A DNA stretch of 64,000 nucleotides from Chrysemys picta bellii. Lineage: Eukaryota. The position numbers and the translations under genes were made by a program. Positions 1 to 41,692 of the stretch are shown piece after piece. The stretch spans positions 287,060,001 through 287,124,000 of the forward strand of contig NC_088792.1 in the NCBI RefSeq assembly GCF_011386835.1, written 5' to 3'. The stretch's first letter is position 1, and every line of letters begins with the position of its first letter. The notes below the pieces were generated by a model, which was not told where the DNA came from, searched no databases, and was given only the letters and a program-made list of their open reading frames with translations.

Positions 1-1077
1 CCCGATACCAGTCGAGAAACTCTGCTTTTTCCCTGGGCATCATGCTTTCTACACCATAGTGCTCTACGCCGGGCATAGACCCCATGTCATTTTGATTTTT
101 CTCAAGTGTTAAAAAAATGTGGAAAATACCCTTTGCACCCTTCAAACCCCATCGCCTGCAGGAGCTTGCTAAGCTTCATGGGCAAGAAGTTTAAAGAGTC
201 TATAAAACGAATGCCCAGGACCTTAACTTCCACATACATTAGTTTACTTCCCTGAGTGATCAATTCTAGGCACTTCTTTTCCTTCAGTAACTGTCTAACG
301 ATGAAATACACATTGTAACCTTTGGAATTGTGCGCTAGGAATATGTAGTCCTGGAACTCTTTGCCAATAAAGGTCTTAATAGCCATAGAAAGACACTCAT
401 CGCCCTTAAATTCCCAGGACTTTTCCAGCTTTAGGGACATAGCAAAAATGTGTGCAACCCAATCTCCTGCGTGTATTCAAAATCATAAAAAAACATACTT
501 TTCTGAGGATTCAGGCTTTCTAAGGCTGTCCCCTCACCATTCTCTAACTTAATCCTATTAGATTTCTTACAAAAAGTCTTTTTCTTAAGCAGGGTTCTGT
601 CACTTTTTGTGCGGACCAGACGGTCAACATAACTCTGTAAGCAGGCATCTTCCGGTTTGGGCATTTTCTTTAAAACATGATCAGGGTCTCCACTGAATTG
701 CACAGCATTTATCAAGGTCACCCCTTGCATTAAATGTTCTTGGGTTAGGCACAGAAATTGCATAGCATAACCTATGGCAATAATAGTGTTCAATAAGCTT
801 TCCAAACACAGCTCAGCACACAAGCCCCGGAGCTTGCAGTTTATATCCATTGAAGTCCAAGTCACACGGTCATGGTGCCAGGGGGCTGGTGCATCTATGA
901 CACAGCCCTCAGAATCTTCAAAAAGCTTTTCCCTAAGACAGTGATTAAGAACAGCGCAAACAGCAACACGTACAATAGTCCGCAACATTTTTTACGCTCA
1001 CGACGTGGCACTGGCTCAGCGAGTTCCATGCCAAACCTCCTCCTAAACTCCTCATAGCCATCATCCTTGGAGTTCAT
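1..1077 (-). pseudogene. Protein-primed family B DNA polymerase, 5' portion, disrupted (left-arm copy, no Harbinger insertion)
   Basis: Frame-broken ORFs 895..1095, 431..988 and 102..440. A 10-bp deletion relative to the right arm lies near 450, and there is a stop after FFNT. Confidence 0.85.
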
Positions 1078-2134
1078 CTTCGCTGCTTGATGCAATGCTG
1101 ACCAGGGCCTCCGGATCCTCTAGAAAGGCATCGTCGAGCTGTCAAGAGATTTTTAGACAAGAAACAAGTGTAAGTTCCCATTGCTTCTTTTTAGATTTAC
1201 ACAACCCCAGGTTCCTAACCCCATTACACCCCATCATCGACTGTCGCTTCTTAATCATTCATTTACCTGAGCGATGTCTTTTCCATTCACCTTGTCCGCC
1301 GGTGACTCCCCCAAGCCATGATCCCCTTCCTCCTCCAGGGTGGTGGACAACGAGAGGCCACCATGCTCATCGGGGTGTGTCATGAGCGGTTGGGCTTCGG
1401 GTTTGGCTTCTGGCATATCCATCAATGGCTGGGCCAAAGGAATCCCCTTGGCTGCTCCCTCATCCTCTTCAGAACTGTCGCTGCTGTAACATTTTCTCCA
1501 CACAAGTCCAAAGGTCTTCGGGGTTAAAACAAAGTCCAAAGTTCTCACGGGGGTGGCAAAGGAGTCCATGTTTCCTCTCAGCCTTTCCATGATTTCTAAA
1601 ACACGTCTTCCTGGTAAGAGATGGCCTCCTCTGCCCAGCGCTGGGACTTATGGGGTGATGGTGCTGCATTCTGATTGGCAGAGGGCATTGGGAGGAGTTC
1701 TTAGAGGGGTCACACGACCCTCTTCTGGGTGGTTCACCCCATCCCAGAACCTGCCCTATTTTGGTCAAATCTCCTTTCGGAGCAATCCTCTGCAGCCGAA
1801 ACTCATCGCGATTGGTAGAAGGTGGTGGGAGGAGTTCTTAGAAGGGTCACACGAACCACTTCCGGACTGGTCACCCCACCCCAGAATTCCTCCCAATTGG
1901 TCAAATCTCCTCTCGGGGTGGTCCCCAGTGGCTGAAACCCCTCCTGATTGGTAGAGAGCAGTGGTAGGAGTTCTTAGAGGGGTCCCATGACACACCTTGC
2001 TTCTGGTCATGTGTCCGCCTTGACCCCGGAAGTAATACCCCCATGGGGTGGGACTTCCAATGACCGGTGGGCAGGGCTTATTGGGTTAAGGTGTGGGGTT
2101 AATGTTTGATTGACAGTAGGGCCCTTATACTACT
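1..2134 (-). mobile_element. Polinton/Maverick remnant, mirror copy (terminal inverted repeat plus 5' part of pPolB), truncated by the window edge
   Basis: Minus-strand terminus AGTAGT ends at 2134 next to the GGAGTG target copy (2135-2140). pPolB exonuclease motifs FFYDFEYTQ, AHNSKGY and RFIDSLNFLPMKL lie in ORFs 431..988 and 102..440. Confidence 0.9.
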
Positions 2135-33300: not shown

Positions 33301-35164
33301 TACTTCCGGGGTCAAGGCGGACACATGACCAGAAGCAAGGTGTGTCATGGGACCCCTCTAAGAACTCCTACCACTGCTCTCTACCAATCAGGAGGGGTTT
33401 CAGCCACTGGGGACCACCCCGAGAGGAGATTTGACCAATTGGGGGGAATTCTGGGGTGGGGTGACTAGTCCGGAAGTGGTTCGTGTGACCCTTCTAAGAA
33501 CTCCTCCCACCACACTCTACCAATCGCAATGAGTTTCGGCTGCAGAGGATTGCTCCGAAAGGAGATTTGACCAAAATTGGGCAGGTTCTGGGATGGGGTG
33601 AACCACCCAGAAGAGGGTCGTGTGACCCCTCTAAGAACTCCTCCCAATGCCCTCTGCCAATCAGAATGCAGCACCATCACCCCATAAGTCCCAGCGCTGG
33701 GCAGAGGAGGCCATCTCTTACCAAGAAGACGTGTTTTAGAAATCATGGAAAGGCTGAGAGGAAACATGGACTCCTTTGCCACCCCCGTGAGAACTTTGGA
33801 CTTTGTTTTAACCCCGAAGACCTTTGGACTTGTGTGGAGAAAACGTTACAGCAGCGACAGTTCTGAAGAGGATGAGGGAGCAGCCGAGGGGATTCCTTTG
33901 GCCCAGCCATTGATGGATATGCCAGAAGCCAAACCCGAAGCCCAACCGCTCATGACACACCCCGATGAGCATGGTGGCCTCTCGTCGTCCACCACCCTGG
34001 AGGAGGAAGGGGATCATGGCTTGGGGGAGTCACCGGCGGACAAGGTGAATGGAAAAGACATCGCTCAGGTAAATGAATGATTAAGAAGCGACAGTCGATG
34101 ATGGGGTGTAATGGGGTTAGGAATCTGGGGTTGTGTAAATCTAAAAAGAAGCAATGGGAACTTACACTTGTTTCTTGTCTAAAAATCTCTTGACAGCTCG
34201 ACGATGCCTTTCTAGAGGACCCGGAGGCCCTGGTCAGCATTGCATCAAGCAGCGAAGATGAACTCCGAGGATGATGGCTATGAGGAGTTTAGGAGGAGGT
34301 TTGGCGTGGAACTCGCTGAGCCAGTGCCACGTCGTGAGCGTAAAAAATTATGCGGACTATTGTACGCGTTGCTGTTTGCGCTGTTCTTAATCACTGTCTT
34401 AGGGAAAAGCTTTTTGAAGATTCTGAGGGCTGTGTCATAGATGCACCAGCCCCCCGGCACCATGACCGTGTGACTTGGACTTCAATGGATATAAACTGCA
34501 AGCTCCGGGGCTTGTGTGCTGAGCTGTGTTTGGAAAGCTTATTGAACACTATTATTGCCATAGGTTATGCTATGCAATTTCTGTGCCTAACCCAAGAACA
34601 TTTAATGCAAGGGGTGACCTTGATAAATGCTGTGCAATTCAGTGGAGACCCTGATCATATTTTAAAGAAAATGCCCAAACCGGAAGATGCCTGCTTACGG
34701 TGTTATGTTGACTGTATGGTCCACACAAAAAGTGACAGAACCCTGCTTAAGAAAAAGACTTTTTGTAAGGCCTGGTCTACACTAGGCGTTTATGTCGAAG
34801 TTAGCGCCGTTAAATCGAATTAACCCTGCACCCGTCCACACTGCGATGCTATTTAGTTCGACATAGAGGTCTCTTTAATTCGACTTCTGTACTCCTCCCC
34901 GACGAGGGGAGTAGCGCTAAATTCGACATGGCCATGTCGAATTAGGCTAGGTGTGGATGGAAATCGACGCTAATAGCTCCGGGAGCTATCCCACAGTGCA
35001 CCACTCTGTTGACGCTCTGGACAGCAGTGCGAGCTCGGATGCTCTGACCAGCCACACAGGAAAAGCCCCGGGAAAATTTGAATTTGAATTCCTTTTCCTG
35101 TCTGGCCAGTTTGAATCTCATTTCCTGTCTGGACATCGTGGCGAGCACAGCAGCACTGGCAACG

Positions 35165-37211
35165 ATGCAGAGCTCTCCAGCAGTGATGGCCATGCAGTCT
35201 GTGAATAGAAAGAGAGCCCCAGCATGGACTGATCGTGAAGTCTTGGATCTCATCGCTGTGTGGGGCGATGAGTCCGTGCTTTCCGAGCTGCGATCCAAAA
35301 GAAGGAATGCAAAGATCTACGAGAAGATCTCTAAAGACATGGCAGAGAGAGGATACAGCCGGGATGCAACGCAGTGCCGCGTGAAAATCAAGGAGCTGAG
35401 ACAAGGGTACCAGAAGACCAAAGAGGCAAACGGACGCTCCGGATCCCATCCCCAGACATCCCGTTTCTACGAGGCACTGCATTCCATCCTCGGTGCTGCC
35501 GCCACCACTACCCCACCAGTGACCGTGGACTCTGAGGATGGGATACTGTCCACGGCCGGTTCCTCAGACATGTTAGGGGACGGGGAAGATGAGGAAGGAG
35601 ATGAGGAGGGCGAGGCAGTTGGCAGCTCTCACAACGCTGATTTCCCCGACAGCCAGGATCTCTTCATCACCCTTACAGAGATCCCCTACGAAGCATCCCC
35701 AGCCATTACCCCGGACACAGAATCTGGTGAAGGATCAGCCAGTAAGTGTTGTAAACATCTAAACATTTATTTTTAACAAAACAGGAATATTAACAATTAA
35801 AAGAATGGGTTGTTCATGATTAGTGTGCCCTAGGCGCTTAACGGTTTAGTAAGGGGCAGTGCAAGTTTTGAAAAGAAATCTAGCAATGTCCGGTTTTCAG
35901 TGATTGTCCTGCACAAGCCGCTCTACTGTGTATTCCCTGCTACTGCAGCTACAGTAAAATGCGGTCTATATGTGCGGGGATAGAGCAGTAATCCTCCTGG
36001 GACATCTCGATGAAGCTCTCCTGGAGGTAACTTGAAAGCCGTTGCATGAGGTTCTTGGGGAGAGCGGCCTTATTGGGTCCTCCGAAGTACGACACGTTGC
36101 CGCGCCACGAGATTATCAGGTACTCGGGGATCATTGCTCTGCACAGCAGGGCGGCATACGGCCCTGGTCTTTGGAGGCTTTCCCGGAGCATTCTCTCTTT
36201 GTCGCTCTCGGAGATCCTCATCAGGGTGATGTCGGCCATGGTGACCTGCTTTTAATTAGGTAGGGGAATGTTAGTGTTGGGACTGCTTTCCCGTTCCTTT
36301 ACAGAACTGTCACCGCTGGTTTGCAGCCACGCGGTGGAGGCGGGAGAGGGGCAGCCGAAAGGGATCGTTCCCGGGGACAGCCGCGAGGGGGTGGGACAGG
36401 GGCAGAGTTCCCGCTTGCCGGATTGCTGGCAGCAGGGACTGACATTGATTTAAATGTGAAATGAGGCCAGTGGTAATATAAAAGTTTTAAACTGCCACAA
36501 GTGTACGGCTTACCATGTCTGCCTGCAACAGAAATTCCGTTGTGCTGCCTCGCTTCTCAAATGTGCTGTTCAAGACCCCAGGCACAGAATGCGAAGGCCG
36601 AGAATTCGACCTTGTGCTGAGTGCGCATGTGAAAGGTGCTGTGCATGGTCTTGTTCACAGAGAAAGACTATGTTCTTTGTTCACAACTACATTTATCTTT
36701 CAGAGGAATTCACTCCCTTTTTCCCATTTCCACAGCCCCGTCTGCGACTGTCTCACAACCTAGCCTGGAATCACACTCCCAGAGGCTAGCGCGGATTAGG
36801 CGTAGGAAGAAGAGGACACGGGAGGACATGTTCTCTGAGCTTATGGCCTCTTCCCAAGCCCAGGCAGCACAGCAGACCCAGTGGCGGGAGAACTTGACCC
36901 GAATGCACCAAGCCAACATGGATCGGGAGGAGAGGTGGCGGCAGGAAGACCAGCAGGCGACTCTAACGCTGCTTGGACTACTGAGGGAGCAAACGGACAC
37001 ACTCCGGCGCCTTGTGGATGTTCTGCAGGAACGGAGGCAGGAGGACAGAGCCCCGCTGCAGTCCATCTCTAACCGCCCTCCCCCGCCACCAAGTCCCATA
37101 CCCACCTCACCCAAAGTGCAAAGAAGGAGAGGCGGCAGAGTCCCTGCTAACTCTCACTCCACCCCTGCAGAGAGCTCTAGTAGCAGAAGGCTCTCATTTC
37201 CCAAAATTTGA
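35165..37211 (+). CDS. Harbinger Myb/SANT (trihelix-like) DNA-binding protein, two exons 35165-35741 and 36736-37211, 350 aa
   Basis: RKRAPAWTDREVLDLIAVWG..RGYSRDATQCRVKIKELRQGY. A GT donor at 35742 and AG acceptor at 36734-36735 join in frame (1053 bp). Predicted coiled-coil C-terminus; AATAAA at 37283-37288. The start ATG is uncertain (35165, 35186 or 35192). Confidence 0.88.
35949..36239 (-). CDS. Candidate BEN-domain protein (96 aa) nested antisense in the Myb gene intron
   Basis: YAALLCRAMIP..GNVSYFGGPNKAALPKNLMQRLSSYLQESFIEMSQEDYCSIPAHID aligns by eye with the BANP-type BEN pattern. Strong Kozak context gtcaccATGG, upstream AG acceptor with CTAAC branch point, downstream AATAAA (minus 35766-35771). 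Confidence 0.6.
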   Translation of the reverse strand: MADITLMRISESDKERMLRESLQRPGPYAALLCRAMIPEYLIISWRGNVSYFGGPNKAALPKNLMQRLSSYLQESFIEMSQEDYCSIPAHIDRILL

Positions 37212-37960
37212 AAAGTTCTTTCCTTCCCGCCTGACACAAGCCCACGTCCAAGTTTCACCTCCCAATGCCATGTGTAGTTGATAATAAAAAATTCGTTTCT
37301 GTTAACTACTGTTTCAATCATGTTCTTTTGGAGGAGGAGGGGAAAGGGGGTTGGAAATTGGACAGGACAGTCTCCTTTGGCAGGGTACATAGTCGGGGGC
37401 AGGCACAGCAGCAGGGCACATACACAGTGCAGTGATGCAGTGACTAGTTGCCCCGGTTAGTCTGGGAGGTTGTTTTGATGTAATGTTGGGGGGGGTGGGT
37501 TGCTCTGTGACTTTGTGGCGGGGGAGGGCAGTTACAGATCTTAAGCGCCGGTCCTTAGACAGGATCACAGAGCCACACAGCATGGGATCTGTAACCGTCC
37601 TCCCCCTGCCACAAAGTCAAATAGACCTCCCATACACACAGTCCCGATCAGGAGGGGTGACAGGCTCCGTTGAAACAAGCATCCCACCGCAGCGGAGCCT
37701 GTCAATCCTTGAGTTTAGAAGCTGCATTCGCATCACAACACTAGACCCGCCCCGCACCACAGTCTGCGTCCCAGTTTTAAAAAATTCCCGCTAAAACAGT
37801 ATTAAAGAAAACGGTGTGCTTTAACAAAGTAGAACTATTTTTATTTCGACACGTGTGTTGGAGGGGGGGTGAAGGGGGTATGTAACTGGATAGGATAGTC
37901 AACATTACCTGGGTAAAGAAACGGGGGCAGGTTTAGCTTCTCAGTACACAAACTATAAAA

Positions 37961-39244
37961 TCACAGGTTACCCTGCTCACTCAGGAACTTTGCTTTCAAA
38001 GCCTCCCGGATGCACAGCGCTTCCCGCTGGTCTCTTCTAATCGCCCGGCTGTCTGGCTGTGAGTAATCACCAGCCAGGCTATTTTCCTCAACCTCCCACC
38101 CCGCCATAAAGGTCTCCCCCTTGCTCTCACAGAGATTGTGGAGCACACAGCAAGCTGCTATAACAATGGGGATATTGGTTTCGCTGAGATCACAGCGAGT
38201 CAGTAAGCTTCTCCATCTCCCCTTGAGACGGCCAAAAGCACACTCCACCACCATTCTGCACTTGCTCAGCCGGTAGTTGAAGAGTTCTTTTTCAGTGTCC
38301 AGGGCGCCAGTATAGGGCTTCATGAGCCAGGGCATTAGCGGGTAGGCTGGGTCCCCGAGGATGACTATAGGCATCTCCACATCCCCAACAGTTATTTTGT
38401 GGTCCGGGAAGTAAATACCTTGTTGCAGCCGTCTAAACAGACCAGAGTTCCTGAAAACACGAGCGTCATGAACCTTGCCCGGCCATCCCACGTAGATGTT
38501 GGTAAAACGTCCCCTGTGGTCCACCAGTGCTTGCAGCACCATGGAAAAGTATCCCTTTCGGTTAATGTACTGGGTGGCCTGGTGGTCCGGTGCCAGGATA
38601 GGGATGTGAGTTCCATCTATGGCCCCACCGCAGTTTGGGAATCCCATCGCTGCGAAGCCATCTATGATCGCCTCCACGTTTCCCAGGGTCACTACCTTTG
38701 GCAGCAGTACATCAACGATTGCCTTCGCTACTTGCATCACAACAACCCCCACGGTAGATTTGCCCACCCCAAACTGGTTCGCGACTGACCGGTAGCTGTC
38801 TGGCGTTGCAAGCTTCCACAGGGCTATGGCCACTCGCTTCTGTACACTCAGTGCAGCTCGCAACCGGGTGTCACTGCGCTTCAGGGCAGGGGACAGCAAC
38901 TCACAAAGTTCCAGGAAAGTTCCCTTCCGCATGCGAAAGTTTCGCAGCCACTGGGATTCATCCCAGACCTGCAGCACTATGCGGTCCCACCACTCAGTGC
39001 TTGTTTCCCGTGCCCAGAATCGCCGTTCCACGGCATCAACATGACCCATTGCCACTGTGATGTCCTCGGCGCTGGGTCGCCTGCTTTCTGACAGGTCTGT
39101 GCTACTCTCAGACTTCAGGACATCACCGCGGTGCCGTAGCCTCCTTGCCTGACTTTTCTGCATCTGCCTCAGGGAAACCTTTATGATAAGCTGCGAGACG
39201 TTGAGAGCGGCCACAACTGCAGCGATGGTCGCAGCGGGCTCCAT
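37961..39244 (-). CDS. Harbinger (HARBI1-like) DDE transposase, 427 aa, uninterrupted
   Basis: GAIDGTHIPI, KGYFSMVLQALVDHRGRF, WPGKVHDARVF, ILGDPAYPL and RMVVECAFGRLKGRWR are all present. AATAAA on minus at 37840-37845. Confidence 0.95.
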   Translation of the reverse strand: MEPAATIAAVVAALNVSQLIIKVSLRQMQKSQARRLRHRGDVLKSESSTDLSESRRPSAEDITVAMGHVDAVERRFWARETSTEWWDRIVLQVWDESQWLRNFRMRKGTFLELCELLSPALKRSDTRLRAALSVQKRVAIALWKLATPDSYRSVANQFGVGKSTVGVVVMQVAKAIVDVLLPKVVTLGNVEAIIDGFAAMGFPNCGGAIDGTHIPILAPDHQATQYINRKGYFSMVLQALVDHRGRFTNIYVGWPGKVHDARVFRNSGLFRRLQQGIYFPDHKITVGDVEMPIVILGDPAYPLMPWLMKPYTGALDTEKELFNYRLSKCRMVVECAFGRLKGRWRSLLTRCDLSETNIPIVIAACCVLHNLCESKGETFMAGWEVEENSLAGDYSQPDSRAIRRDQREALCIREALKAKFLSEQGNL

Positions 39245-41692
39245 GCTCGGAGTACAGTGGCGTCCGCGCTGTCAATGACTGGAAAAGCGCGCGAACTGTT
39301 TTCCCGCCGGCGCTTTCAGGGAGGGAGGGCGGGAGTGATGGACGGATGACGACAGTTTCCCAAAAGCACCCTCGACTCATTTTGTTACCCAGAAGGCATT
39401 GCCGGCTACACCCAGAATTCCAATGGGCAGAGGGGACTGCGGGAACTGTGGGATAGCTGACCACAGTGCACCGCTTCGAATGTCGACGCTATCACCGTTA
39501 GTGTGGACGCACAAAGTCGAATTACTGTCCTTAGTGTGGACACACACGTTCGACTTTGCAATATCGATTACAAAAATTCGATGCAAGTAAAATCGAACTA
39601 CTCTCGTAGTGTAGACAAGGCCTAAGAAATCTAATAGGATTAAGTTAGAGAATGGTGAGGGGACAGCCTTAGAAAGCCTGAATCCTCAGAAAAGTGTATT
39701 TTTTTATGATTTTGAATACACGCAGGAGACTGGGTTGCACACTCCCAATTACATTTTTGCTATGTCCCTAAAGCCGGAAAAGTCCTGGAATTTAAGGGCG
39801 ATGAGTGTCTTTCTATGGCTGTTAAGACCTTTATTGGCAAAGAGTTCCAGGACTACACATTCCTAGTGCACAATTCCAAAGGTTACCATGTGTACGTCAT
39901 CGTTAGCCAGTTAGTGAAGGAAAAGATGTGCCTAGAATTGATCACTCAGGGAAGTAAACTAATGTATGTGGAAGTTAAGGTCCTGGGCATTCGTTTTATA
40001 GACTCTTTAAACTTCTTGCCCATGAAGCTTAGCAAGCTCCTGCAGGTGATGGGGTTTGAAAGGTGCAAAGGGTATTTTCCACATTTTTTTAACACTTGAG
40101 AAAAATCAAAATTACATGGGGCCTATGCCCGGCGTGGAGCACTATGGTGTAGAAAGCATGATGCCCAGGGAAAAAGCAGAGTTTCTCGACTGGTATCGGG
40201 ACCACAGGTATGAGATGTTTGACTTGCAGAAAGAGCTCGCGTATTACTGTGAGCAGATGTCAAAATTTTGAGACAGGCTTGTATCCTATACAGAGAAGAG
40301 ATTATGAAAATGACGGAGAAGGGAGATATAGTAGAGAGAGGACCTGGTAAATTCACTGAGATAAAACTGTGTATAGACAAACGATATCCGCCTATATTAC
40401 AAACCTAACCCCAGGGAAGAAATTCACTATTATGATTTTACCAGCCTGTACCCTTTCGTAAGCAAAACCCAAGAATACCCTATCGGACACCCCAAAATAC
40501 TTTATGACAAATTTGGACCCCTTGCAAATTATTTTGGAATTGCAAAAGTTAAAATGTATCCCCCACGAGGCTTCTTTTCCCCATTGTTACCTGTCAGAGT
40601 GGGTAACAAGCTTATGTTCCCGCTATGACAAACCTGTGCTGAAACCGAGCAGCGGGAGATGTGGCACCCACACTGACGAGGAGAGGGCCATCCTGGGGAC
40701 TTGGTGCACGGTGGAATTGAATGCGGCCATAGCGAAGGGATACACAGTGGCTAAAATATATGAAATCTGGCATTTTAATGAAAAATCTGATGAACTGTTT
40801 TCGGAGTACATAAAATTACACCTCCACCAGAAACAAGAGGCTTCAGGGTATCCCAGCTGGTGCACAGACAAAGAAAAACAAAATAAGTACATTAACGATT
40901 TCTACCAGAAAGAAGGCGTGCATTTACGCCAACACGAGATCAGGTTTAACCCCGCTAAACACCAAATCGCTAAACTGTTTTTAAATTCTCTGTGGGGTAA
41001 ATTCGGCCAAAGAACAAACCTACCCAATAGCAGCATCGTGAGAAACCCTGACGAACTCTTTCAGTACCTGTTTTCCCCTCCACTACGAGGTTTCATCCTG
41101 TGAGTTTATCGACAATGAAACAGCGTGCGTGTCTTGGAAGCATGCAAAAGACTAGTACTCAGTCTCTGGAAATACCAATGTTTTCATAGCCTGTTTCACC
41201 ACTGGTTACGCCCGCTTAGAACTATACAACCTGCTAGACAGGTTGCAAGAGCGGTGCCTGTACCATGACACTGACTCGGTGAGATCTGTGAAAAGGGAGG
41301 GTGACTGGAATCACCTCTGGGGGATTATTTAGGGGACCTCACGAGCAAGATCCCGCCAGCTCAACACATCACCCAGTTTGTGTTGGCAGGCCCGAAAACA
41401 TACAGGTATAAGCTGTAGAGAGGAAAGGCCTGTATGAAAGTCAAAGGTTTTACCCTGAACGTAGCAAACTGTGAAAAGATCAACTTGGACAGTCTGAAAG
41501 ATCTAGTCCTGGACTATTGCATGGGCCTGTGAGACAACACCTCAAAAAAGATAGAGGTGCAGCAGCCCTCTATCGTAAGGAACAAAAATCAATGGCAAAT
41601 AGAGACAAAAACCCTTAATAAAACACAGAAAGTTGTTTACAACAAGAGGGTCCTAGGAGAAGGGTTTAAAACCCTGCCCCATGGCTTTTAAA

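What the first reader, a model, noticed from the sequence alone, without database searches (positions are those of the whole stretch)
35949..36245. A third gene in the Harbinger: BEN-domain-like ORF hidden antisense in the Myb intron
PIF/Harbinger elements normally encode a transposase and a Myb/SANT protein (established). Here a 96-aa minus-strand ORF lies wholly inside the Myb gene intron with gene-like signals: AG acceptor at 36247-36246, CTAAC branch point about 29 nt upstream, Kozak gtcaccATGG and AATAAA about 180 bp after the stop (seen). Its sequence YAALLCRAMIP-x7-GNVSYFGGPNKAALPKNLMQRLSSYLQESFIEMSQEDYCSIPAHID lines up with the BANP BEN domain as I recall it (MALTLLDYLF..SNLSGQGKHGKKQLDP..IRCHLFYKFGITESDWYRIKQSID), matching A..L, N[VL]S..G...K..L, L...F, D[YW]..I...ID. 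BEN domains are sequence-specific DNA-binding modules of repressors and insulator proteins (established). A transposon-borne BEN protein could be a self-regulator, anti-silencing factor or targeting module (inference). I do not know of this arrangement being described, but could not check.
Basis: partly seen in the sequence, partly recalled or inferred. Interest (0 to 1): 0.88.

Follow-up and report, generated by a model that had tools for sequence, protein, structure and literature searches.

The report
Third, BEN-fold gene in Harbinger transposon
A turtle Harbinger transposon, a kind long described as carrying two genes, carries a third small gene hidden backwards inside an intron; it is kept by selection across turtle transposon lineages and folds like a BEN DNA-binding domain.

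Summary
It lies in the intron of the Myb-like gene of an intact Harbinger element (34769-39622, TAA target duplication, 427-aa DDE transposase).

ORF length alone is not evidence: such ORFs are common here. Conservation is. In a turtle Harbinger only 70-76% identical in DNA, the ORF is a gapless conserved island in an otherwise unalignable intron. dN/dS is 0.16, equal to the Myb exon. Six other turtle copies of several lineages keep the order transposase, Myb exon 2 (antisense), ORF, with Myb exon 1 (antisense) detected in all but one.

The gene has two exons. A conserved ATG followed directly by a splice donor (36516-36512) lies 268 nt upstream of the acceptor, giving a 99-aa product.

Pfam BEN does not match the ORF; relatives match only below threshold. 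AlphaFold (pLDDT 96) with Foldseek returns only BEN domains at the top (BEND3 BEN4, TM 0.75). A second model built from distant relatives gives the same result.

Function is inferred: a small BEN-only regulator or accessory factor of the element. Its near-zero net charge tempers the DNA-binding reading. I found no published description. This is a new variant of a known kind.

The parts
34766..34768 (.). Left target-site duplication TAA
   Evidence: The flanks match an uninterrupted inverted paralog at window 201-1334 that carries a single TAA.
34769..34783 (+). Left terminal inverted repeat (GGCCTGGTCTACACT)
   Evidence: 14 of 15 bases match the right end. The extended inverted repeat is I2. 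The sequence is shown.
34790..34970 (.). Left subterminal array of WWTCGAM motifs (7 copies) plus GTCCACAC-type motifs; candidate protein-binding sites
   Evidence: K-mer count of element ends against interior.
35165..35741 (+). Myb/SANT-like gene, exon 1 (first in-frame ATG 35165; other ATGs at 35186 and 35192; donor GTAAGT at 35742)
   Evidence: PF13837, E 1.1e-21. Donor and frame.
35742..36660 (+). Myb gene intron. The 3' end is uncertain: in-frame acceptors give an exon 2 start at 36661, 36706 or 36736. It contains the whole coding part of the BEN gene on the other strand.
35766..35771 (-). AATAAA polyadenylation signal of the BEN gene, 177 nt after its stop
35949..36245 (-). BEN gene exon 2, coding part: VT plus the 96-aa ORF plus stop. 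The acceptor is cag|GTCACC, with AG at 36247-36246; an alternative AG is at 36250-36249.
   Evidence: It forms a conserved gapless island. dN/dS is 0.156. The acceptor is conserved in L002, L003, L004, L005, L008 and L009. The AF2 model has pLDDT 95.9, and its top Foldseek hits are BEN domains.
36246..36513 (-). BEN gene intron (268 nt): donor GTAAGC at 36513-36508, CTAAC branch site at 36274-36270
   Evidence: Sequence is poorly conserved and length varies between copies (131-445 nt), as expected for an intron.
36514..36516 (-). Start codon that ends BEN gene exon 1 (context gcagacATG|gtaagc)
   Evidence: This is the most conserved block of the Myb intron in alignment A3. ATG|GTRAG is present upstream of the acceptor in the window and in L002, L003, L004, L008 and L009. 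The Chelonia annotation UY3_03743 uses exactly this structure.
36517..36640 (-). Conserved non-coding block upstream of the start codon: putative 5'UTR and promoter of the BEN gene (transcription start not known)
   Evidence: 57-64% identity to L002 with almost no gaps, while the adjacent intron is unalignable. It is not coding on the plus strand in L002, where the Myb frame has stops.
36661..37211 (+). Myb/SANT-like gene, exon 2 (start uncertain, see intron entry; stop included)
37961..39244 (-). Transposase gene: uninterrupted 427-aa ORF on the same strand as the BEN gene and upstream of it. A possible internal donor CAG|GTCTGG follows codon 92.
   Evidence: PF13359 DDE_Tnp_4, E 3.3e-37. Donor comparison.
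39420..39600 (.). Right subterminal array of WWTCGAM motifs (8 copies) plus GTCCACAC-type motifs
39608..39622 (-). Right terminal inverted repeat (GGCCTTGTCTACACT on the minus strand)
39623..39625 (.). Right target-site duplication TAA

Best explanation
SHOWN.
- The ORF is the main coding exon of a real third gene of this Harbinger lineage, and that gene has been kept by selection.
- The gene lies on the transposase strand, nested antisense in the intron of the Myb-like gene.
- It has two exons. Exon 1 ends with its start codon (36516-36514), followed directly by a consensus splice donor. After a 268-nt intron, the acceptor at 36246 opens exon 2, which encodes the rest of a 99-aa protein.
- The internal ATG at 36239 also has a strong Kozak context and would give the same domain.
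- The protein is essentially one compact domain with a BEN fold: five helices plus a short hairpin.

INFERRED.
- The protein is an accessory or regulatory factor of the element, not part of the basic cut-and-paste machinery.
- My preferred mechanism (about 40%): like other BEN-only proteins, it binds a specific DNA motif. The motif would be in the element's subterminal repeats or promoters, and binding would tune transcription or transpososome assembly, more likely as a repressor or insulator than as an activator.
- Its position inside the Myb intron on the opposite strand would also couple its expression inversely to that of Myb.
- A side effect of its strong acceptor and polyA signal: elements sitting in host introns trap host transcripts and create host-BEN fusion isoforms.
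For: - Anatomy: an intact Harbinger with TAA duplication, TIRs and an empty paralogous site, plus DDE_Tnp_4 and Myb_DNA-bind_4 matches.
- Conserved island: against the Malaclemys copy L002, the ORF is a gapless 65-72% identical stretch. The flanking intron shows 11-32% identity with many gaps.
- Selection: window against L002 differs at 26/18/46 sites in codon positions 1/2/3. dN/dS is 0.156, against 0.161 for Myb exon 1 and 0.312 for the transposase, z about 6.9. A deleted, non-autonomous copy (L003) shows a relaxed ratio of 0.66 against L002.
- Layout: the same order and strands hold in L002, L003, L004, L008 and L009, and transposase followed by the ORF also in alligator L005. Identity ranks agree between transposase and BEN across these loci.
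- Family size: 51 clusters at 50% identity with E<1e-3, the domain almost always at the C-terminus.
- Two-exon model.
- Fold: AF2 pLDDT 95.9, pTM 0.87. Foldseek against PDB ranks 1-11 are all BEN domains; the best is BEND3 BEN4 7w27_C at TM 0.75, rmsd 2.4 A, prob 1.00. Top hits in the viral library are poxvirus and bracovirus BEN proteins. A second model from distant relatives also returns BEN domains in ranks 1-15.
- Sequence bridge: BEN is the only Pfam family recurring among relatives, in 3/32 and 5/11 members, best 20.8 bits.
- Acceptor use: NCBI models splice host exons (TEDC1, RAB3C and others) into the exon.
- Candidate sites: subterminal motif arrays.
- From established knowledge, not tested here: in the zebrafish element Harbinger3_DR, transposase plus Myb-like protein suffice for transposition. 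A third protein is therefore expected to be accessory.
Against: - No expression data could be examined. Splicing rests on conserved signals and on gene models by others, which are predictions.
- The Pfam BEN profile does not match the ORF, and profiles of the family find no BEN chain in the PDB by sequence. Foldseek E-values are modest (4.7e-3 at best).
- The Harbinger-borne domains have net charge near zero (window 0; range about -6 to +3). The gecko and fish-type relatives are strongly basic, +6 to +17. This fits a DNA-binding role less well and leaves room for a protein-protein role.
- The transcription start is unknown.
- Only a few copies per lineage were sampled, and they were found through predicted proteins, which favours intact copies.
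Confidence: 0.8

Rival explanations
1. The exon is mainly an alternative 3'-terminal exon of the transposase transcription unit. A donor inside the transposase ORF would splice to the acceptor. The product would be a short protein with the transposase N-terminus, no DDE domain and a C-terminal BEN domain. This would be a built-in inhibitor or regulator, analogous to truncated P-element repressors.
For: Gene models join transposase N-terminal sequence in frame to the exon. These are Malaclemys LOC128825970 X1/X2 (donor CAG|GTATGG after ...RIVLQ), Chelonia UY3_14567 and an alligator model. The exon is downstream of the transposase on the same strand in every copy. In the window the equivalent junction would be in frame.
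Against: The donor position differs in each model: after about residue 39, about 92 and about 190. The window's donor is weak (GTCTGG, with C at +3), and the GT there is forced by a Val codon. A dedicated ATG|GTRAG first exon is conserved just upstream in all six turtle copies, including those whose exon 2 lacks an ATG. The models are predictions, one of them from a deleted copy.
Confidence: 0.15
2. The gene is real, but the BEN-fold protein works through protein-protein contacts, not DNA binding. It could act as an adaptor or competitor for the Myb-like protein, the transposase or a host chromatin factor.
For: Net charge of the Harbinger-borne domains is near zero, unlike the basic gecko and fish-type relatives. 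Among the structural hits is the first BEN domain of BEND3 bound to a peptide-repeat domain of PICH (5jno), so BEN folds can serve as protein-binding modules.
Against: The best structural matches are DNA-bound BEN domains: BEND3 BEN4, BANP, NACC1 and BEND6. Conserved basic residues sit in the GG-x-NK-x-x-LP-R/K-NL segment.
Confidence: 0.3
3. The ORF is a passenger: a host BEN-like exon captured once by a Harbinger, carried along without benefit to the element.
For: Related BEN-like exons exist in host-gene contexts without any Harbinger nearby: a gecko KDM4B-like gene and a fish ZMYM4-like gene. Capture from, or donation to, host genes is therefore plausible.
Against: The ORF is retained with purifying selection as strong as on Myb exon 1, across lineages whose transposases differ by 26-40% in protein and more in alligator. 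Splice signals and position are conserved too. A useless passenger would have decayed.
Confidence: 0.05
4. The ORF is a chance ORF, or the conservation reflects a non-coding function of the Myb intron.
For: ORFs of this length are common by chance in this window.
Against: Substitutions are in excess at third codon positions, and dN/dS is 0.16. GC3 is 0.745. There are 51 homologous protein clusters. AF2 gives pLDDT 96 from the family alignment.
Confidence: 0.02

Closest known systems
Canonical two-gene PIF/Harbinger elements of vertebrates (e.g. zebrafish Harbinger3_DR)
   Same: DDE_Tnp_4 transposase, Myb/SANT-like second protein, 3-bp TAA duplication, short TIRs and subterminal repeats.
   Different: A third conserved gene is nested antisense in the Myb intron. 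The papers on vertebrate Harbingers that I could search describe only transposase and Myb-like genes. Repbase and Dfam entries could not be checked.
BEN-solo transcription factors (Drosophila Insensitive, Elba1/2; mammalian BEND5/BEND6)
   Same: A single BEN domain at the C-terminus is the only recognisable domain. The fold matches BEND6 and Insv BEN structures.
   Different: Those are host genes with long N-terminal regions and a basic DNA-binding surface. Here the protein is almost nothing but the domain (99 aa), is transposon-encoded, has neutral charge, and falls below the Pfam BEN threshold.
BEN domains of BEND3 (BEN4, BEN3) and BANP
   Same: These are the best structural matches: TM 0.75, 0.61 and 0.65, prob 0.90-1.00.
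   Different: Only 14-22% identity, and no sequence-profile match. DNA specificity is unknown here.
BEN proteins of poxviruses and bracoviruses
   Same: A BEN fold carried by a mobile or viral genome. They are the top hits in the viral structure library.
   Different: Those are large multi-domain or multi-BEN viral proteins. No sequence-level relationship was shown.
Tn3-family transposase DBD1
   Same: A BEN-like fold used by a transposon to recognise its own inverted repeat (PMC9579193). This is a precedent for a BEN fold reading transposon ends.
   Different: It is bacterial, part of the transposase polypeptide, and was noted through fold similarity only.
Truncated or alternatively spliced transposase-derived repressors (P-element 66-kDa and KP proteins; from my own knowledge)
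   Same: If the transposase-N::BEN isoforms predicted in Malaclemys, Chelonia and alligator are real, they would be catalytically dead products sharing the transposase N-terminus.
   Different: Here the added C-terminal part is a separate conserved domain with its own start codon and first exon.

Membership tests
BEN domain (Pfam PF10523) | Match to the PF10523 profile at or above the gathering score (23.2 bits) | tested here: not met
   The window ORF has no Pfam hit even at E<=10. Relatives hit only below threshold: 3 of 32 (best E 0.0058), 5 of 11 (best E 0.0069), and P0029 at 20.8 bits, E 4.7e-4.
BEN domain (Pfam PF10523) | BEN three-dimensional fold | tested here: met
   AF2 gives pLDDT 95.9. 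Foldseek against PDB ranks 1-11 are all BEN domains, best TM 0.75 and rmsd 2.4 A over 91 columns. The viral library's top hits are BEN proteins. An independent model from distant relatives has BEN domains in ranks 1-15.
BEN domain (Pfam PF10523) | Sequence-detectable homology to solved BEN domains | tested here: not met
   Profiles A1 and A2 searched against all PDB sequences return no BEN chain at E<=10.
BEN domain (Pfam PF10523) | Sequence-specific DNA binding | not testable with these tools
   Basic residues are conserved in the GG-x-NK-x-x-LP-R/K-NL segment, but net charge is about 0. Testing needs EMSA, SELEX or DAP-seq.
PIF/Harbinger DNA transposon | DDE_Tnp_4-type transposase | tested here: met
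   PF13359, E 3.3e-37; intact 427-aa ORF.
PIF/Harbinger DNA transposon | Second gene encoding a Myb/SANT-like DNA-binding protein | tested here: met
   PF13837, E 1.1e-21, in exon 1.
PIF/Harbinger DNA transposon | 3-bp target-site duplication (TWA) and terminal inverted repeats | tested here: met
   TAA on both sides, a single TAA at the empty paralogous site, and 14/15 matching termini.
BEN-solo factors | A single C-terminal BEN domain, no other domain, acting as a sequence-specific repressor or insulator | tested here: inconclusive
   Single-domain architecture is met. Regulatory activity was not tested.

The most novel reading that the evidence does not exclude
The BEN-fold protein is a third, functionally required or strongly beneficial component of this reptile Harbinger lineage. 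It would be a sequence-specific factor that reads one of the two subterminal motif classes and gates transposition, or shields the element from host silencing. Through its acceptor and polyA cassette, it would also be a recurrent source of new host BEN-containing proteins; the gecko KDM4B-like::BEN isoform would be an early domestication. This would link part of the vertebrate BEN repertoire to transposons.
Probability: 0.25. Interest if true: 0.85.

Novelty: new variant of a known kind. Interest (0 to 1): 0.72.

Why it matters
PIF/Harbinger is the textbook case of a DNA transposon that needs two proteins. A third gene has been conserved for at least the age of turtle Harbinger lineages, and probably since before turtles and crocodilians split. 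Part of these elements' biology has therefore gone unannotated; NCBI calls the products 'uncharacterized' and Pfam has no model that catches them.

- It gives a concrete candidate for self-regulation or chromatin interaction by a vertebrate DNA transposon.
- It places a BEN fold, known from repressors, insulators and large DNA viruses, in a eukaryotic transposon.
- It shows a ready-made exon-trap cassette that already produces predicted host-BEN fusion isoforms, a route to new transcription factors.
- The gene structure is itself an unusual, compact arrangement: nested antisense in another gene's intron, with a first exon whose only coding content is the start codon.
- The element in the window looks young and intact, so the proteins can be expressed and tested directly.

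Tried and rejected
- Pfam on the ORF alone gave nothing.
- phmmer of the ORF against PDB sequences gave one chance hit, E 0.98.
- Family profiles against PDB sequences gave weak TFIIA-gamma hits (E 0.2) and a dehydrogenase hit. Neither has a fold or context rationale, so I treat them as chance.
- I considered ORF length as evidence and rejected it. Such ORFs occur at about 0.45 per kb in shuffled sequence.
- I considered that the conserved block at 36517-36640 is a Myb exon or the Myb branch site. Rejected: the Myb frame has stops there in L002, 1-2-nt indels occur between copies, and it lies 145 nt or more from the nearest candidate Myb acceptor.
- I considered the transposase-fusion reading as the main product and kept it only as a minor rival.
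- The alligator locus L005 is too decayed to show Myb or the first exon.
- The Logan contig L001 shows the acceptor but no ATG|GTR within its 489 upstream bases.
- The look-up of P0007 found no record, and the P0053 gene range was too long to fetch.
- Gecko and fish loci hold BEN-like exons but no Harbinger genes, so they neither extend nor limit the Harbinger association.
- The Myb exon 2 dN/dS is not usable, because that alignment runs into non-coding sequence.
- Literature searches for Harbinger with BEN domain, BEN domain with transposon or transposase, Harbinger with third ORF, and Harbinger with Chrysemys found no description of this gene.
Full report
**1. What is at the coordinates**

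The minus-strand ORF at 35949-36239 (96 aa) is real.
- acceptor AG at 36247-36246, so the exon starts at 36245, with a second AG three bases upstream;
- CTAAC at 36274-36270;
- the context gtcaccATGg;
- AATAAA at 35771-35766, 177 nt after the stop.

ORF length is not evidence. The window holds 60 ATG-ORFs of this size or larger, and block-shuffled sequence still gives about 29. Composition is suggestive: GC3 is 0.745 against GC2 of 0.41.

**2. The element around it**

The flanks of the region match, in inverted orientation, an uninterrupted copy of the same host repeat at window 201-1334 (98% and 94% identity). The two matches abut at a single TAA. This fixes the element at 34769-39622 (4854 bp). 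It has a TAA target duplication and termini GGCCTGGTCTACACT / GGCCTTGTCTACACT.

- It carries an uninterrupted 427-aa DDE_Tnp_4 transposase on the minus strand (37961-39244, E 3.3e-37).
- It carries a plus-strand Myb_DNA-bind_4 gene (E 1.1e-21).
- Myb exon 1 ends at 35741 with donor GTAAGT. In-frame acceptors place Myb exon 2 at 36661, 36706 or 36736.
- The two genes converge. The ORF lies in the Myb intron, on the transposase strand.
- A Chrysemys picta locus holds a transposase fragment 99.6% identical to the window's. The closest BEN homologue (94%) is also from Chrysemys. The window therefore comes from that species or a close relative, and the family is young.

**3. Is the ORF conserved as protein?**

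A search of 1.84 billion representative proteins with the ORF found 51 clusters at E<1e-3, with 18 below 1e-10. The domain is almost always at the C-terminus. Named sources are turtles (Chrysemys, Malaclemys, Mauremys, Chelonia), geckos and a loach. One hit (P0038) traces to an American alligator assembly.

I fetched the DNA for several hits.

- Malaclemys locus L002 holds a complete Harbinger that is only 70-76% identical in DNA, and it has the same layout. blastn aligns the transposase, the Myb exons and, within the intron, only the ORF.
- A global alignment shows the ORF as a gapless stretch of 65-72% identity. It is flanked by intron with 11-32% identity and heavy gapping.
- Codon-wise, window against L002 differs at 26/18/46 sites in positions 1/2/3. 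dN/dS is 0.156, against 0.161 for Myb exon 1 and 0.312 for the transposase. pS exceeds pN with z about 6.9.
- A deleted non-autonomous copy (L003) shows a relaxed ratio of 0.66 against L002, as expected after death of a copy.
- The order transposase(+), Myb exon 2(-), ORF(+) recurs in L002, L003, L004, L008 and L009. Myb exon 1(-) follows the ORF in L002, L003, L008 and L009, but was not detected in L004. Transposase followed by the ORF on the same strand also recurs in alligator L005.
- Identity to the window ranks the loci in nearly the same order for transposase and ORF: L008, then L002, then the Chelonia copies L004/L009 and the deleted L003, then L005 last. This fits co-descent, not repeated capture.

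**4. Gene structure**

Aligning the intron upstream of the ORF in three copies shows one sharply conserved block, gcag(a/c)cATGgtaagcc. It is an ATG in good Kozak context followed immediately by a consensus splice donor.

- In the window the ATG is at 36516-36514 and the donor at 36513-36508. That is 268 nt upstream of the acceptor, and in frame with it.
- The same ATG|GTRAG lies 131-445 nt upstream of the acceptor in L002, L003, L008, L004 and L009.
- In the Chelonia family (L004, L009), exon 2 has no ATG of its own. Translation there must start at the upstream codon.
- The existing Chelonia mydas annotation UY3_03743 uses exactly this structure: a first coding exon of three bases, a 131-nt intron, then the domain exon.
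- The acceptor, a pyrimidine tract followed by cag|G, is present in every locus.
- The 120 nt upstream of the ATG (36517-36640) are also conserved with few gaps, but are not coding. I read them as 5'UTR and promoter. The transcription start is unknown.

The predicted product in the window is M-V-T followed by the 96 residues, 99 aa in all.

**5. Other uses of the acceptor**

Several NCBI and other gene models splice upstream exons into this exon.

- Host exons: TEDC1 isoform X5, RAB3C isoform X3, a CDK-like kinase, a glycine-transporter-like protein and PFKFB.
- The N-terminal part of the transposase itself: Malaclemys LOC128825970 X1/X2, Chelonia UY3_14567 and an alligator model.

These models suggest that the acceptor is used, and that elements in host introns act as exon traps.

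The transposase-fusion reading is kept only as a minor rival, for two reasons. The donor differs in every model. In the window it is weak (CAG|GTCTGG), and its GT is forced by a valine codon.

**6. What the protein is**

*By sequence.*
- The ORF has no Pfam match even at E<=10.
- Among relatives, BEN (PF10523) is the only family that recurs, and always below the gathering score. It hits 3 of 32 members and 5 of 11, with a best score of 20.8 bits against 23.2.
- Family profiles find no BEN chain among PDB sequences.

*By structure.*
- AlphaFold2 with the 32-sequence alignment gives pLDDT 95.9 and pTM 0.87: five helices and a short hairpin.
- Foldseek against the PDB returns only BEN domains in ranks 1-11. 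These are BEND3 BEN4 (TM 0.75, rmsd 2.4 A, 91 columns), BEND3 BEN3, BANP, NACC1 and BEND6; Insensitive follows at rank 16.
- Against viral models, the top hits are poxvirus and bracovirus BEN proteins.
- A second model was built from the more distant, basic relatives (pLDDT 87). It also returns BEN domains in ranks 1-15.

I conclude that this is a divergent BEN-fold clade that current sequence models do not capture.

**7. Function (inferred)**

Two-protein Harbingers transpose without such a factor. This is established for the zebrafish element and was not tested here. The third protein is therefore most likely accessory.

- For DNA binding: BEN-only proteins are typically sequence-specific repressors or insulators. 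A BEN-like fold reads the inverted repeat in Tn3 transposase (PMC9579193).
- Candidate sites: the element offers two classes of subterminal motif. WWTCGAM occurs 7 and 8 times near the two ends, and GTCCACAC occurs twice per end.
- Against DNA binding: the Harbinger-borne domains are electrically neutral, whereas the gecko and fish-type relatives are strongly basic. A protein-protein role is therefore a serious alternative.
- The nested antisense position predicts transcriptional interference with Myb.

**8. Novelty**

Full-text searches found no paper describing a BEN-like or any third gene in Harbinger elements. Repbase and Dfam could not be consulted. Database names for the products are 'uncharacterized' or 'hypothetical', or those of the trapped host gene. 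I rate it a new variant of a known kind.

**9. Verdict**

- The interpretation (a third gene, BEN-like, antisense in the Myb intron) is supported.
- The gene model is refined: two exons, with an upstream start codon.
- The BEN call rests on fold, not on sequence profile.
- The mechanism remains to be tested.

Noticed in passing
window 201-1334 versus 34001-34768 and 39623-40000: The Harbinger interrupted a repeated host sequence. An uninterrupted, inverted paralog lies at 201-1334 (98% and 94% identity) and serves as an empty site showing the single TAA.
   Followed up: yes
window 39815-40099 and 40504-41103 (+): ORF fragments next to the insertion match PF03175 (protein-primed DNA polymerase B; E 9.4e-8 and 3.5e-12). 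This suggests the remnant of a Polinton/Maverick-like element, in pieces.
   Followed up: partly
window 37220-37920: The window element has about 500 bp between the convergent Myb and transposase stops that the Malaclemys copy lacks. The stretch is rich in short inverted repeats (e.g. 37065-37106 with 37498-37539, and 37503-37709). It may be a small nested insertion or a family-specific spacer.
   Followed up: no
L007 14547-14855 (Gekko kuhli); P0053 (Gekko japonicus): A strongly basic (+15) BEN-like exon is used as a terminal exon within a KDM4B-like gene in two geckos. No Harbinger transposase or Myb lies within 8 kb. It may be a domesticated or independently host-borne relative.
   Followed up: partly
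L006 16914-17270, 18333-18743, 19470-20030 (Triplophysa tibetana): Three tandem BEN-like exons lie inside a ZMYM4-like gene model, upstream of its QRICH1/DUF3504 part. No Harbinger genes are in the locus.
   Followed up: partly
P0003, P0004, P0005, P0009, P0042 (turtle gene models); L008 40341-40637: Host genes (TEDC1, a CDK-like kinase, RAB3C, a glycine-transporter-like gene, PFKFB) have predicted isoforms that end in the Harbinger BEN exon. The cassette therefore acts as an exon trap.
   Followed up: partly
window 37961-39244 versus L002 11626-12912: Synonymous divergence of the transposase (dS 0.55) is about a third of that of Myb exon 1 (1.51) and the BEN exon (1.55) between the same two elements. 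This hints at a mosaic or recombinant history, or at extra constraint on transposase DNA.
   Followed up: no
window 34790-34970 and 39420-39600: Two distinct subterminal motif classes are present: WWTCGAM (7 and 8 copies) and GTCCACAC(T) (2 per end). That is enough for more than one element-encoded DNA-binding protein.
   Followed up: partly
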